A stretch of DNA of 64,000 nt from Macrostomum lignano (lineage: Eukaryota): the NCBI GenBank assembly GCA_002269645.1, contig NIVC01000391.1, forward strand, positions 496,001-560,000. The letters run 5' to 3'. Both the position numbers and the translations under genes were made by a program. Shown here one piece after another: positions 3,014-16,619 of this stretch. Under the pieces are notes generated by a model. That model did no database searches and had not been told where the DNA came from. It saw only the letters and a program-made list of their open reading frames with translations. Within the stretch, counting starts at the first letter, position 1, and each line of letters begins with the position of its first letter.

Positions 3014-6000
3014 ATGGCGTCCGAAACTGGTGAGTAAACATTACTCAGATTACTTAGTTAAATATAGGCAATTATTGAATGGCTATGGTTCGGTTTATAA
3101 TCAAACTCAAAATTTCTTTTTTTTAGGCAAGTTTTTTTTGCTTCTATTTGAGCTGCTCATTTTTGGTCGCCTGTGTCACTGCGCCCCGACAGAATGTGAG
3201 TAATGACTGCTTTGCACAGATCCGCATGCTTCAAGTTAACTAGATAAAAGGTTTTTGGTTCTTTTAGGTTCAAAATAATCGTACCTATTCTAGTTTAAAA
3301 ATTTCAAGTTGAATAATTCAATTACGTTTACCTGTATTCAGATTATACCAGTCTAGCTTCTATACATTGCACACTCTCTCCCCAGACTGCAGTGGACCGA
3401 AAAACATTCCAACAAGGACTGGCGGCGACATCGTCAGTCACGCCGGTGTTGAAGTGTCTGATTATGCCAACGACATGAGCTGCATGTGGCAGATCATCGC
3501 ACCCTCGGACAGTGTCGTTGTGGCCTGGTTCACATACCTCGACCTGGAACATGGATCATCTACCGAAAATGACAATGTGACCCTGTACGACGGCAAACTA
3601 GGCTCCAGCGTCATAACAGTAGTACGCAATGAGCTACCCCAAAATATTGAAACTTCTCATCTTCTCTGGAGCAACTATGTCTCGCCGAAATTCGTGTCGA
3701 CCTCGAACATCATGACCGTCCAATTTCGGTCGAACAGTCGTGTCACTGGAAGAGGATTCAGAATCCGCTATGCAGTCACTCATAAGCGTAAGCCGTCAAT
3801 TTTTTGCTGGATTTTACTGCCTGTTATCTAGGCGAAGCCAATTGCTTACAAGATGACATTTTTGCTTGCACTGCAGCTACGCGGAAGGCCTGTGGCATTC
3901 TCGAGTTTGATGACGACTCCATGACTTCCGGTACCTTCACCAGCCACGAGGAATACGATGGATTGGTTCCTTACTCGCCAGGCATGAGTTGCAAGTGGCA
4001 GGTATCAGCTTACTCAAAAGATCATCCGACCGAGCTGCACGAAGCAATCCTAACAATTAAAGACTTGTCAATCAGTAAAAATTTTCTCAATTTGGTAGCG
4101 TCTGGCGGCTACAAAAGAAAAGATCTACTTAAAGTCTTTGGCTGGGCAGGCGTCCGCAACATAATGCTAAAGCCGGTGTATGGCAGCACCATTCGGTTCC
4201 ATTCCGCAACTCGAGGCTATCAGTCTACCGGGTTTCGGTTTCGATTCGGTGAGCAGGCCTGGAATCGCAGTTTTGTTAATAGTAAAAAACAGACTGCAGA
4301 AATTTTTCACTACGTGGTTCTAAATTCACTTGCGATAATGTAGTTACATATAGTTACATGTAGTTACATGTAGTTACATAATGTAGTTACCAACTACATA
4401 TAGTTGATGTAGTTGGTGCAACCGACAGCTCAGATTGCGCGACGCATCTGAAGGCTGCGTACGGCTGTTCAGTCCAAGGACTGGGGGGGGGTCGCTTTTT
4501 CCGAGTGGGTCGATGGACGCGAATCATTGACCGAAAATGACAATGTGGCCCTGAGCCCGACGCTCAAACCAATAGGCTGCAAAGCGTGTAGTACTATATG
4601 ACCCCACATACCCCACTGTACAACCCCATTAAAGCATGATATAAGTAAGCATTATGATCACAGACTTCTGCCATTCCAATGCCAATGCTTACTAGGCAGC
4701 GTACCGGGAAGTGTGTGTTTATAAGGACAATAAAAATTTACATTCGATTGCTCTAAGAAATTTGTCATTTAACTGAAAAAGTCTATTAGCTACTGGTGAG
4801 TCTGGTGAGTTACCATGTAGTAGTACTTAATCGAACGATTGTAAAAAGCTAGGGGCAATTAAGTAGCATAGTAACTAGCACAGTCGCCTACAATGAGACC
4901 AGTAAGCATTGCGCCACCGATTTGGCAATCCGTCTTCCAGCGTATTACCGATTATTCAACGCCTCGTTGGACAGCGGCGAAATCGTCAGCCACAGCAGAG
5001 TCGGGTCGTCGCCCTACGCCAAAACCGACAGGTCCATCTGGAACATGGGCGCGCCGTTTGGAAACGAGATCGGCATCCGAGTGACTTACTGCAGCCTGAA
5101 CTCGGCATTCGGCATTCGGGAGGACTCGATCATTCTGTACGACATGGTTACCGATAGGACTGTGGCGTATATGAATGCGAGGAACTGCAGCGGCCAAGCG
5201 TTTCAGTCGGTATCGAATCAAATGAAAGTAATTTTTACAACTGACGTCAGGGGCTCCGGCCTGGGTTTCAGGATACGGTACAGTACCACTCAGGAAGGTA
5301 GGCTTTAACTACTACTACTACTACTACTACTACTACTACTACTACTACTACTACTACTACTACTACTACTACTACTACTACTACTACTCTACTACTACTA
5401 CTACTCTACTACTACTACTACTACTACTACTACTACTACTACTACTACTACTACTACTACTACTACTACTACTACTACTACTACTACTACTACTACTACT
5501 ACTACTACTACTACTACTACTACTACTACTACTACTACTACTACTACTACTACTACTACTACTACTACTACTACTACTACTACTACTACTACTACTACTA
5601 CTACTACTACTACTACTACTACTACTACTACTACTACTACTACTACTACTACTACTACTACTACTACTACTACTACTACTACTACTACTACTACTACTAC
5701 TACTACTACTACTACTACTACTACTACTACTACTACTACTACTACTACTACTACTACTACTACTACTACTACTACTACTACTACTACTACTACTACTACT
5801 ACTACTACTACTACTACTACTACTACTACTACTACTACTACTACTACTACTACTACTACTACTACTACTACTACTACTACTACTACTACTACTACTACTA
5901 CTACTACTACTACTACTACTACTACTACTACTACTACTACTACTACTACTACTACTACTACTACTACTACTACTACTACTACTCCATTTCAGCCCAATAC

Positions 6001-15210: not shown

Positions 15211-16619
15211 ATGGCGGCTGAAACGCGTAAGCAGACTACGAGCGCGTACTAAGATTGCTGCGGTTATACTTTATCAATACAGTATGGTTGTCAAGAGAGT
15301 AATTCAAACCTGCATTCATATTCCTAATAGAACTCAAATGTTACTTTTCAGACAAGTTCCTTCTGCTGCTGATTGAGCTGCTGCTGATCGGACACGTGTG
15401 TCTCATCAGCATCCCGGCACACTGTGAGTAGCCAGAATAACTGCTTGGCAATGAGTTTCATACAAGGATTATGGACTGGTTGGGACAAATAAATCAGTAT
15501 TATATGCAGCTCTACTGATGCTTTTAAATAAAATAAATGCACAAAATTCTCTCTGCAGATTCGACCTTAAAGCCGGAGGATTTAATGGATGCGACTGCTG
15601 AACCTGAAGGCCCGACAGCTAAACCTGAATTCCCATCTGCTAAACCTGAAGCCTCAACTACTGAACCTGAGGCCCCGACTGCTAAACCTGAAGAACCGAC
15701 TGCTAAACCTGAAGAACCGACTGCTAAACCTGAAGAACCGACTGCTAAACCAGAAGAACCGACTGCTAAGCCTGAAGAACCGACTGCTCGACCTGAAGAA
15801 CCGACTGCTAAGCCTGAAGAACCGACTGCTAAGCCTGAAGAACCGACTGCTAAACCTGAAGAACCGACTGCTAAACCTGAAGAACCGACTGCTAAGCCTG
15901 AAGAACCGACTGCTAAACCTGAAGAACCGACTGCTAAGCCTGAAGAACCGACTGCTCGACCTGAAGAACCGACTGCTAAGCCTGAAGAACCGACTGCTAA
16001 GCCTGAAGAACCGACTGCTAAGCCTGAAGAACCGACTGCTAAGCCTAAAGAACCGACTGCTAAGCCTGAAGAACCGACTGCTCGACCTGAAGAACCGACT
16101 GCTAAGCCTGAAGAACCGACTGCTAAGCCTGAAGAACCGACTGCTAAGCCTGAAGAACCGACTGCTGTACCTGAAAAACCGACTGCTAAGCCGGAAGAAC
16201 CAACTAGGAAACCTGAAGAACCGACTGCTAAGCCTGACGAACCGACTGGGAAACCTAAAGAACCGACTGCTGAGCCTGAAGAACCAACTACTAAGCCTGA
16301 AGAACCGACTGCTAAACCTGAAGCCTCAACTGCTGAATCTGAAGCCCCAACTGCTAAACCTGAAGCCTCGACTGCTCGACCTGAAGCCTCAACGCCTTCG
16401 CCAAGAGTCCCAACGCACTCTTCTGAGCCCTCTACTCGTGCTCCAACTACTCCCTCTCCATGTGAACCTAAGAAGCCGGAATCCCCTGAACGATGGATCC
16501 TGAACCTATGCGTCAGAAGTCTCAGCTTGTGCTAAAAAACTCTGAACTCATGCGCCACAAGCCTGGACTCCTGCACTAGGCTAAACACACAGCAACAGCG
16601 CTCATTCAGGCAAGGCTGA
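15211..16619 (+). CDS. CUB-less paralog of the 3014-8837 gene: signal peptide + PEEPTAK stalk + Cys-heptad tail; premature TAA at 16533
   Basis: Exons 15211-15226, 15352-15423, 15559-end, phase-1 GT-AG introns. N-terminus MAAETHKFLLLLIELLLIGHVC matches MASETGKFFLLLFELLIFGRLC. Tail LNLCVRSLSLC*KTLNSCATSLDSC matches LNECMKNLSVCSQSLNSCASSLASC. Confidence 0.8.

What the first reader, a model, noticed from the sequence alone, without database searches (positions are those of the whole stretch)
3014..16619. Secreted family with a conserved (LxxC-xxx)4 Cys-Leu zipper tail and a removable CUB cassette
Seen: two genes share an identical 13-bp TATA motif, a 16-nt first exon, a signal-peptide exon, a stalk of 7-aa repeats and a 75-nt tail (8661-8735, 16500-16574) with four exact heptads: LNEC-MKN-LSVC-SQS-LNSC-ASS-LASC versus LNLC-VRS-LSLC-*KT-LNSC-ATS-LDSC. 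Gene 1 carries five phase-1 CUB exons between signal and stalk; gene 2 splices straight from signal to stalk. Inference: Leu at a and Cys at d positions form a disulfide-locked coiled coil that oligomerises these proteins into bouquets, as a mucus, adhesive or extracellular scaffold, with gene 2 a headless partner. I know no named domain matching this tail.
Basis: partly seen in the sequence, partly recalled or inferred. Interest (0 to 1): 0.72.

Follow-up and report, generated by a model that had tools for sequence, protein, structure and literature searches.

The report
Flatworm secreted proteins with Leu/Cys-heptad tail
Two neighbouring genes of the flatworm Macrostomum lignano encode mucin-like secreted proteins ending in a short, previously unnamed helix with leucine and cysteine on one face, which probably links chains together by disulfide bonds; one copy is cut short by a stop codon and nothing shows that either gene is expressed.

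Summary
The window is Macrostomum lignano DNA. Gene 1 (3014-8837) has eight GT-AG exons: a 16-nt ATG exon, a signal exon, five phase-1 CUB exons, and one exon holding 67 copies of a 21-nt Pro/Ser/Thr-rich repeat plus the tail. Gene 2 (15211-16619) has the same promoter motif, ATG exon, signal exon, stalk and tail, but no CUB exons.

The exact (LxxCxxx)3LxxC pattern occurs only at 8661 and 16500. All 14 nucleotide differences between the two tails avoid the Leu and Cys codons (P = 0.002). AlphaFold2 predicts the tail as a confident helix (pLDDT about 97).

Pfam, PDB sequences and 1.84 billion representative proteins hold no homologue. The only similar array is in a soil-bacterial protein and looks convergent.

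- Gene 2 has an in-frame TAA after its second heptad.
- Gene 1's stalk carries compensating -1/+1 frameshifts.
- Neither gene matches any annotated M. lignano protein.

The best reading is a disulfide-laddered parallel coiled coil, most simply a dimer, at the end of a mucin-like protein. That is a new variant of a known principle (PLVAP, COMP, matrilins). "Bouquets" and "headless partner" are not supported. Interest is moderate.

The parts
2904..2916 (+). Gene 1 TATA-type motif GTCTATAAATAGG
   Evidence: One of only two exact copies in the window
3014..3029 (+). Gene 1 exon 1, 16 nt (MASET + 1 base)
   Evidence: ATG followed by a GTGAGT donor; conserved in gene 2
3127..3195 (+). Gene 1 exon 2, signal-peptide-like hydrophobic segment, ends in phase 1
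   Evidence: Reads GKFFLLLFELLIFGRLCHCAPTE; 62% identical to the gene 2 segment
3386..3787 (+). CUB exon 1
   Evidence: Pfam CUB 48.5 bits; phase 1-1
3877..4248 (+). CUB exon 2 (divergent)
   Evidence: Pfam CUB 15.1 bits, below the cut-off but covering profile positions 8-110
4941..5297 (+). CUB exon 3
   Evidence: Pfam CUB 27.8 bits
5993..6361 (+). CUB exon 4
   Evidence: Pfam CUB 37.1 bits
6472..6852 (+). CUB exon 5 (divergent)
   Evidence: Pfam CUB 13.7 bits, below the cut-off but covering profile positions 9-110
7042..8837 (+). Gene 1 last exon: stalk, linker, tail, polyQ, stop
   Evidence: Open in one frame from the acceptor to the TGA at 8835-8837
7106..8518 (+). 21-nt tandem array, 67 copies, read as RPE(A/V)ST(A/D); 43% Pro+Ser+Thr
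8199..8509 (+). Frame-shifted block of the stalk, read as (LKLRLLD)n, about 100 aa. It has a 20-nt unit at its start and an extra base at about 8508. The old frame carries a TGA at 8321-8323
   Evidence: AlphaFold2 predicts a long helix, with pLDDT mostly 84-96 by 10-residue block
8661..8735 (+). Gene 1 Leu/Cys heptad tail, LNECMKN LSVCSQS LNSCASS LASC
   Evidence: AlphaFold2 places it in a helix spanning residues 46-101 of window 8508-8834, with pLDDT about 97 over the tail
8766..8818 (+). CAG/polyQ run following the tail
15089..15101 (+). Gene 2 TATA-type motif GTCTATAAATAGG
15211..15226 (+). Gene 2 exon 1, 16 nt (MAAET + 1 base)
15352..15423 (+). Gene 2 exon 2, signal-peptide-like segment, ends in phase 1
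15559..16535 (+). Gene 2 exon 3 up to the in-frame TAA (16533-16535): KPEEPTA stalk plus two heptads
16500..16574 (+). Gene 2 tail homologue; four heptads at the DNA level, interrupted by TAA at codon 12
   Evidence: 61 of 75 nt identical to the gene 1 tail
16617..16619 (+). Position of the ancestral stop of gene 2, aligned with the gene 1 stop (QQQRSFRQG* against QQQRPFLQR*)

Best explanation
These are two tandem, lineage-specific paralogues of Macrostomum lignano that encode secreted, mucin-like glycoproteins.

Each has a signal peptide, a long Pro/Ser/Thr-rich heptapeptide stalk that is probably extended and O-glycosylated, and a C-terminal alpha-helix of four heptads with Leu at a and Cys at d. 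Gene 1 also has five CUB binding domains between the signal and the stalk.

The helix most likely pairs in parallel with a second chain. The Leu residues form the hydrophobic seam, and each Cys layer oxidises to a symmetric interchain disulfide. The result would be a covalent ladder of up to four rungs, most simply a dimer, that ties two stalks together at their C-termini. In that role it would do the job the cystine-knot domain does in gel-forming mucins.

Shown here: the gene models, the CUB domains, the repeats, the pattern, the predicted helix, and the constraint on Leu and Cys codons. Inferred: secretion, glycosylation, pairing, disulfide formation, and the oligomer number.

Gene 2 is a CUB-less copy that is now truncated after its second heptad by a probably recent nonsense change. 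It may be a weakened partner or a young pseudogene.
For: - Species: a peroxiredoxin ORF in the window is 100% identical to an M. lignano UniRef entry.
- Gene models: all introns are GT-AG, all CUB exons are phase 1-1, and gene 1 is open over 1253 aa. Gene 2 shares the promoter motif, ATG exon, signal exon, stalk unit and tail.
- Stalks are 43-45% Pro+Ser+Thr.
- The pattern occurs only at the two tails in six frames, with chance expectation about 0.
- All 14 differences between the tails avoid the 24 nt of Leu and Cys codons (hypergeometric P = 0.0023). The remaining tail codons change at or above the synonymous rate (dN 0.22 against dS 0.17).
- In gene 1 a -1 shift in the stalk is compensated about 300 nt later by a +1 shift, so the tail stays in frame.
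- AlphaFold2 single-sequence prediction gives one helix covering the tail with pLDDT about 97. In a longer construct the tail is still helical, with pLDDT about 85.
- Solved and engineered precedents show that Cys in coiled-coil cores form interchain disulfide ladders or rings. [quoted passage not shown] The engineered four-ring 'cysteine zipper' is the other case (PMC4476739).
Against: - Only two copies exist, both in one locus. Their 3' ends are young (dS about 0.2), so 'conservation' covers little evolutionary time.
- No orthologue or further paralogue was found in 5.8e9 clusters or 1.84e9 representatives or in metagenome contigs.
- Neither gene matches an annotated M. lignano protein, although that proteome is in the database. 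This is weak evidence against robust expression.
- Gene 2 has an in-frame stop inside the tail. Gene 1's stalk is frame-shifted, and the old frame holds a TGA. Both are compatible with decay.
- The tail is rich in Ser, Asn and Cys, which are poor helix formers, and lacks the charged e/g residues typical of coiled coils.
- AlphaFold2 on a single low-complexity sequence over-predicts helices.
- No multimer model could be made.
- 21-nt minisatellites are common in this window, and one gives (IxxCxxx)n by itself. Heptad periodicity therefore comes cheaply in this genome.
Confidence: 0.45

Rival explanations
1. Decaying or non-functional lineage-specific genes. Under this reading the tail is the relic of a four-unit 21-nt minisatellite (LNSCASS-like), and its regularity reflects recent common ancestry or gene conversion rather than function.
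For: - Gene 2 has a TAA inside the tail.
- Gene 1's stalk has two frameshifts and a TGA in the old frame.
- Tail dS is only about 0.17-0.2 and dN/dS is at or above 1.
- No annotated protein and no homologue was found.
- 21-nt minisatellites are frequent in this window, and one yields (IxxCxxx)n.
- The four tail units share 8-16 of 21 nt with each other.
Against: - All 14 substitutions avoid the Leu and Cys codons (P = 0.0023). Roughly 5 nonsynonymous changes would be expected in those codons at the rate seen in the other tail codons.
- Gene 1 is open over 1253 aa with eight intact exons and canonical splice sites.
- The two frameshifts cancel, so the tail stays in frame.
- The signal exon shows purifying selection (dN 0.18 against dS 1.15).
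Confidence: 0.25
2. The tail is a cysteine-bearing cross-linking handle rather than a self-pairing coiled coil. Its four thiols would form disulfides with other matrix or mucus proteins, or with the single free-looking Cys of gene 2's linker, and so weld the protein covalently into a secreted material.
For: - The composition is Ser/Asn/Ala/Cys-rich with no e/g charges, which is atypical for autonomous coiled coils (sequence).
- Four heptads is near the lower limit for a stable coiled coil.
- The context is extracellular and mucin-like.
Against: - Leu at every a position is also invariant. A pure thiol handle would not need that.
- The helix is predicted with high confidence.
- The strict 7-residue register places the Leu and Cys residues on a single face.
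Confidence: 0.2
3. The tail is a thiolate metal-binding site. Cys layers inside a three-stranded coiled coil would bind soft metal ions, as in designed TRI-type peptides (from my own knowledge of that literature).
For: Only the geometry speaks for it: stacked Cys layers at d positions (sequence).
Against: The protein has a signal peptide and would pass through the oxidising secretory pathway, where disulfides are expected. No His, Asp or Glu ligands accompany the Cys. No homologue with such a role was found.
Confidence: 0.05

Closest known systems
PLVAP CC1 (solved structure; PMC10083539)
   Same: [quoted passage not shown]
   Different: There is no sequence similarity. PLVAP's Cys residues are irregularly spaced (11-25 residues apart) in a long membrane-anchored rod. 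Here there are four Cys, one in each of four consecutive heptads, within 25 residues at the free C-terminus of a secreted protein.
COMP/thrombospondin and matrilin oligomerisation domains (my own knowledge; matrilin papers listed)
   Same: Short heptad-repeat helices at a terminus of modular extracellular proteins. They assemble the chains and are locked by interchain disulfides, producing multi-armed molecules.
   Different: In those families the Cys residues flank the coiled coil rather than occupy every d position, and the oligomers are 3- to 5-stranded. There is no Pfam or sequence match here.
Engineered 'cysteine zipper' in a trimeric viral fusion-protein stalk (PMC4476739)
   Same: The concept is repeated Cys layers in successive heptads replacing non-covalent zipper contacts with covalent ones.
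   Different: It is engineered. It uses Cys pairs at g and a to close three-disulfide rings in a trimer. The flatworm tail has a single Cys per heptad, which fits a dimer ladder.
Gel-forming mucins and DMBT1-type mucosal glycoproteins (my own knowledge)
   Same: A secreted protein with a long Pro/Thr/Ser repeat stalk, globular binding domains (CUB in DMBT1), and a C-terminal Cys-dependent multimerisation element.
   Different: No vWD, CTCK, SRCR or ZP domains were detected. The multimerisation element here would be a 25-residue helix rather than a cystine knot or ZP module.
P0124, an uncharacterised secreted protein from a soil-metagenome bacterium
   Same: After a signal peptide and a small N-terminal domain it has an array of about 25 heptads. 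In 19 of them Leu/Phe is at a and Cys is at d, for example LASCDQD LGACTSD LTNCDQQ.
   Different: It is bacterial, with an ECF sigma factor and a Ser/Thr kinase as neighbours. The similarity is confined to the low-complexity heptads (E 1e-6 from seven stretches). No relatives were found in GTDB genomes. It is almost certainly convergent.

Membership tests
CUB domain (PF00431) | Match to the CUB profile above the gathering score | tested here: met
   The whole N-terminal part scores 117.7 bits. Exons 3, 5 and 6 pass individually at 48.5, 27.8 and 37.1 bits. Exons 4 and 7 score 15.1 and 13.7 bits, sub-threshold but spanning the full profile length.
Alpha-helical coiled coil | Heptad repeat with hydrophobic residues at a and d | tested here: met
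   Leu at a and Cys at d in four consecutive heptads in both genes. Cys is an unusual d residue.
Alpha-helical coiled coil | Alpha-helical conformation of the segment | tested here: inconclusive
   The AlphaFold2 single-sequence monomer gives a helix with pLDDT about 97 and about 85. Such predictions over-call helices in low-complexity heptads, and the composition is Ser/Asn-rich.
Alpha-helical coiled coil | Two or more helices packed knobs-into-holes; defined oligomer | not testable with these tools
   Only monomer prediction is available, and there is no experimental data.
Disulfide-stapled coiled coils (PLVAP-, COMP-, matrilin-like) | Interchain disulfides between core or flanking Cys | not testable with these tools
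   This needs non-reducing gels, mass spectrometry or a multimer model.
Any named domain for the tail | Significant match to Pfam, PDB sequences or any protein cluster | tested here: not met
   Pfam gave none at E<=1. The best PDB match has E 0.4. The 5.8e9 clusters gave no candidate. The 1.84e9 representatives gave only repetitive bacterial proteins.
Mucin-like (PTS) domain | Long tandem repeats rich in Pro, Thr and Ser in a secreted protein | tested here: met
   There are 67 and 38 copies of a 7-aa unit with P+S+T of 43% and 45%. O-glycosylation itself was not tested.
Gel-forming mucin / DMBT1 family | vWD/C8/TIL, CTCK, SRCR or ZP domains | tested here: not met
   CUB is the only domain that reaches Pfam's threshold in gene 1, and none is found in gene 2.
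Secreted protein | Cleavable N-terminal signal peptide | tested here: inconclusive
   There is a short charged n-region and a 12-19 residue hydrophobic core in both genes. However, a conserved Glu sits in the core, and no signal-peptide predictor was available.

The most novel reading that the evidence does not exclude
The tail could be a natural minimal 'cysteine zipper'. This would be a 25-residue module with Leu at every a position and Cys at every d position, folding into a parallel coiled coil with a disulfide at every heptad, the densest natural disulfide ladder known. It would have arisen independently in a flatworm secreted protein and in a soil bacterium's secreted protein with about 25 such heptads. 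That would make it an unrecognised, recurrent solution for covalent chain pairing outside cells, and a compact covalent dimerisation tag.
Probability: 0.3. Interest if true: 0.55.

Novelty: new variant of a known kind. Interest (0 to 1): 0.38.

Why it matters
If the tail does form a four-rung disulfide ladder, it would be a very small, genetically encodable covalent dimerisation module. It would also give a new example of how lineage-specific extracellular proteins are built from repeats. In this locus a signal exon, a phase-compatible CUB cassette, a minisatellite-derived stalk and a short zipper can be gained, lost or frame-shifted without breaking the reading frame. For Macrostomum biology it would add a candidate component of mucus, adhesive or reproductive secretions. 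If the genes are not expressed, the locus is simply an illustration of how 21-nt minisatellites in this genome generate heptad-periodic peptides.

Tried and rejected
1. I tested whether the tail derives from the stalk repeat read in another frame. Local alignments of both tails against both stalks, and against the shifted block, score no better than shuffles (39-137 of 300 shuffles reach the observed score). Rejected.
2. A PDB hit to a helical stretch of hemolysin E has E 0.4 and 12 bits and shows no Cys correspondence. It is chance.
3. The HMMER hits P0122 and P0123 are long repetitive bacterial proteins that score through many weak stretches. They are spurious.
4. I tried to reach homeologous copies through the neighbouring peroxiredoxin gene. 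The exact UniRef protein has no contig on record. The two paralogous M. lignano loci fetched (L001, L002 from GCA_002269645.1) share only the peroxiredoxin and hold no family member.
5. A metagenome scan for the tail and a GTDB scan for P0124 relatives found nothing.
6. Literature searches on Macrostomum with CUB, mucin-like, seminal-fluid and repeat terms found no description of this family.
7. Rfam found nothing in 1-20000.
8. I considered an intron that would remove the frame-shifted block. No usable GT donor or AG acceptor pair is seen in the sequence, so the block is taken as coding.
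Full report
**Source of the window.** The window is metazoan DNA with short GT-AG introns, many microsatellites and minisatellites, and several retroelements. An ORF at 24132-24839 encodes a 2-Cys peroxiredoxin that is 100% identical to a UniRef entry of Macrostomum lignano. The window therefore comes from this free-living flatworm. Two paralogous peroxiredoxin loci from the M. lignano assembly GCA_002269645.1 were fetched. 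They share only that gene with the window.

**Gene 1.** Reading the sequence and assembling exons in a script gives eight exons:
- 3014-3029
- 3127-3195
- 3386-3787
- 3877-4248
- 4941-5297
- 5993-6361
- 6472-6852
- 7042-8837

Every intron is GT-AG. The five middle exons have lengths divisible by three and all sit in phase 1. The assembled reading frame is open for 1253 codons.

Pfam finds CUB as the only domain that reaches its threshold. Scanned exon by exon, three CUB exons pass the gathering score (48.5, 27.8 and 37.1 bits). Two are sub-threshold at 15.1 and 13.7 bits but align over the whole profile. By eye CUB1 resembles CUB4, and CUB2 resembles CUB5.

**Gene 1 last exon.** It begins with 67 copies of a 21-nt unit, read as RPE(A/V)ST(A/D), with 43% Pro+Ser+Thr. 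A 45-residue unique linker follows, then the 25-residue Leu/Cys tail (8661-8735), a polyQ run, and the stop.

**Gene 2.** Its exons are 15211-15226, 15352-15423 and 15559 onward. It has the same 13-nt TATA-type motif, which occurs only twice in the window. It also has the same 16-nt ATG exon, a 62%-identical hydrophobic signal segment, and a stalk of 38 copies of a related 21-nt unit read as KPEEPTA. It has a homologous tail at 16500-16574. The signal exon splices directly to the stalk exon, so there is no CUB cassette.

First, the '*' in gene 2's tail is a genuine TAA at 16533-16535. As assembled, gene 2 ends after LNLCVRSLSLC, that is, after two heptads. The sequence beyond the stop is still very close to gene 1, with 2 differences in the last 36 nt of the tail. 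It runs on to a stop that aligns with gene 1's stop, QQQRSFRQG* against QQQRPFLQR*. The nonsense change is therefore probably recent, an allele, or an assembly error.

Second, gene 1's stalk is not uniform. A 20-nt unit at about 8199-8219 shifts the frame by -1. An extra base at about 8508 shifts it back. The roughly 100 residues in between are read as (LKLRLLD)n rather than RPEASTD, and the old frame carries a TGA at 8321-8323. The open frame therefore includes a Leu/Arg/Lys-rich block that AlphaFold2 predicts as one long helix. The two shifts cancel, which keeps the tail in frame. This is mild evidence that the tail matters. Decay followed by a lucky reversion, or assembly errors, cannot be excluded.

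**Is the tail more than chance?**
- The exact pattern (LxxCxxx)3LxxC occurs at only these two places in all six frames. Markov-simulated windows give about zero.
- The two copies exist by descent, so the real question is constraint. The two 75-nt tails differ at 14 positions, and none falls in the 24 nt that encode the eight Leu and Cys residues (P = 0.0023).
- Ten of the 17 other codons differ, and each difference changes the amino acid (one creates the stop).
- A Nei-Gojobori estimate gives dN 0.22 against dS 0.17 for the tail, and dN 0.36 against dS 0.21 with flanks. The ATG and signal exons give dN 0.18 against dS 1.15.

The 3' ends are thus much younger than the 5' ends, through gene conversion or partial duplication. 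Within them the surface positions change freely while the a and d positions do not. That is the signature expected of a zipper-type interface. It rests on 25 codons and one pair of sequences.

**Structure.** An AlphaFold2 single-sequence model of window 8508-8834 gives a single helix over residues 46-101. The pLDDT is about 97 across the tail, which spans residues 52-76. In the longer construct 8181-8834 the tail is again helical, with pLDDT about 85. In a helix, a strict L-x2-C-x3 register puts all Leu and Cys on one stripe.

No multimer prediction was possible, so pairing and disulfide geometry remain inferred. Several things count against a classical coiled coil:
- The tail is rich in Ser, Asn and Ala.
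- It has almost no charged e/g residues.
- It is only four heptads long.
- Single-sequence AlphaFold2 tends to over-predict helices for such sequences.

**Relatives.**
- The tail region found no candidate among 5.8 billion protein clusters.
- It has no Pfam family and no significant PDB sequence match (best E 0.4).
- It found no metagenome contig.
- A full HMMER search of 1.84 billion representatives gave three hits. Two are long repetitive bacterial proteins and are spurious.
- The third, P0124, is a 473-residue protein from a farmland-soil metagenome. It has a signal peptide and an array of about 25 heptads. In 19 of them Leu or Phe is at a and Cys is at d. Its neighbours are bacterial, including an ECF sigma factor and a Ser/Thr kinase. 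It has no relatives in GTDB genomes. I take it to be a convergent analogue rather than a homologue. It does show that Leu-a/Cys-d arrays recur in secreted proteins.
- The CUB region found only a 28%-identical amphioxus ovochymase-like protein. M. lignano proteomes are in that database, so neither gene appears to be annotated. This is weak evidence against strong expression, although repeat-rich transcripts assemble badly.

**Mechanism.** The most likely reading is a secreted, mucin-like protein whose C-terminal helix pairs in parallel with a second chain. The Leu residues would form the seam, and each Cys layer would form a symmetric interchain disulfide.

There is solved precedent for this principle. 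PLVAP CC1 is a parallel dimeric coiled coil with five symmetric interchain disulfides (PMC10083539). An engineered 'cysteine zipper' of four disulfide rings stabilises a trimeric coiled coil, but it needs two Cys per heptad to close the rings (PMC4476739). With one Cys per heptad, a dimer is the arrangement that leaves no unpaired thiol, so 'bouquets' of many arms are not implied.

COMP, matrilins and tenascins (my own knowledge) show the same logic of a short heptad helix plus Cys assembling modular matrix proteins, although their Cys residues flank the helix. Functionally the tail would play the part that the cystine-knot domain plays in gel-forming mucins. The CUB domains of gene 1 would supply binding, and gene 2 would be a stalk-only copy. 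Whether gene 2 can still pair with its two heptads is open.

**Rivals.**
- The genes are decaying, and the tail is the relic of a 21-nt minisatellite. 21-nt minisatellites are common in this window, and one at 44.6-45.0 kb produces (IxxCxxx)n on the minus strand.
- The Cys residues cross-link to other proteins rather than to a second copy.
- The tail binds metal.

The first rival is the most serious. The substitution test and the intact 1253-codon frame argue against it, but they do not exclude it.

**Verdict.** The tail is an unnamed, apparently lineage-specific motif. As a mechanism it is a new variant of a known kind, a disulfide-stapled coiled-coil oligomerisation module on an extracellular protein. 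Interest is moderate. It would rise if transcripts, further Macrostomum copies or a disulfide-laddered dimer were shown.

Noticed in passing
window 8199-8509: Compensating -1 and +1 frameshifts inside gene 1's 21-nt repeat array make about 100 residues read as (LKLRLLD)n instead of RPEASTD. The old frame holds a TGA at 8321-8323. AlphaFold2 predicts the shifted block as one long helix. A repeat array may be acquiring a new peptide by frame shift, or the assembly may contain indel errors.
   Followed up: partly
P0124 / L003 8001-9422 (soil metagenome ERZ1823572): A bacterial secreted protein carries about 25 consecutive heptads, 19 of them with Leu/Phe at a and Cys at d (for example LASCDQD LGACTSD). 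It has no Pfam family above threshold and no relatives in GTDB genomes. It is a much longer natural Leu/Cys heptad array than the flatworm tail.
   Followed up: partly
window 11271-12610: A fibrinogen-related (FReD) gene lies between the two family members; the C-terminal exon 12020-12607 scores 114 bits against Fibrinogen_C. Its first exon holds six copies of a 24-nt repeat. Its intron starts with seven copies of a 30-nt unit (11764-11981), each containing a GTGAGT donor-like site, so several alternative donors are possible.
   Followed up: partly
window 5308-5983 and 9498-9825: There are two very long microsatellites. (ACT)226 fills most of the gene 1 intron between CUB3 and CUB4. (TGTC)82 lies downstream of gene 1.
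   Followed up: no
window 9860-11250: A degenerate reverse-transcriptase-like fragment, broken by stops, lies between gene 1 and the FReD gene. It gave no Pfam hit at E<=0.001 for the 164-aa ORF.
   Followed up: partly
window 14131-14585: A roughly 455-bp palindromic, MITE-like element sits about 500 bp upstream of gene 2's TATA motif. Its arms are 75-85 nt and 87-93% complementary. A related 39-nt arm lies at 13412-13450, and the octamer GTCTATGG recurs through 13200-14700.
   Followed up: partly
window 28130-29494, 41377-42315, 44548-45254, 46600-46890, 50612-51472: Many further minisatellites have 21- or 24-nt periods and stay open in several frames ([41 protein letters not shown]). Heptad-periodic peptides therefore arise readily in this genome. 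The array at 44.6-45.0 kb gives (IxxCxxx)n on the minus strand.
   Followed up: partly
window 24132-24839: A single-exon 2-Cys peroxiredoxin ORF is 100% identical to M. lignano UniRef A0A1I8GRM2. This identifies the species.
   Followed up: yes
window 33216-37037 and 52523-57862 (minus strand): Two retroelements are present. The first has a reverse transcriptase followed by a tyrosine-recombinase-like ORF (DIRS-like; RVT_1 62 bits, Phage_integrase 25.7 bits). The second is a non-LTR element with ORF1, an endonuclease, and RT-RNase H (RVT_1 99.9 bits).
   Followed up: partly
window 58562-59275 and 60908-61633: Two single-ORF trypsin-like serine protease domains (131 and 200 bits) lie in a G+C-rich stretch at the end of the window.
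   Followed up: partly
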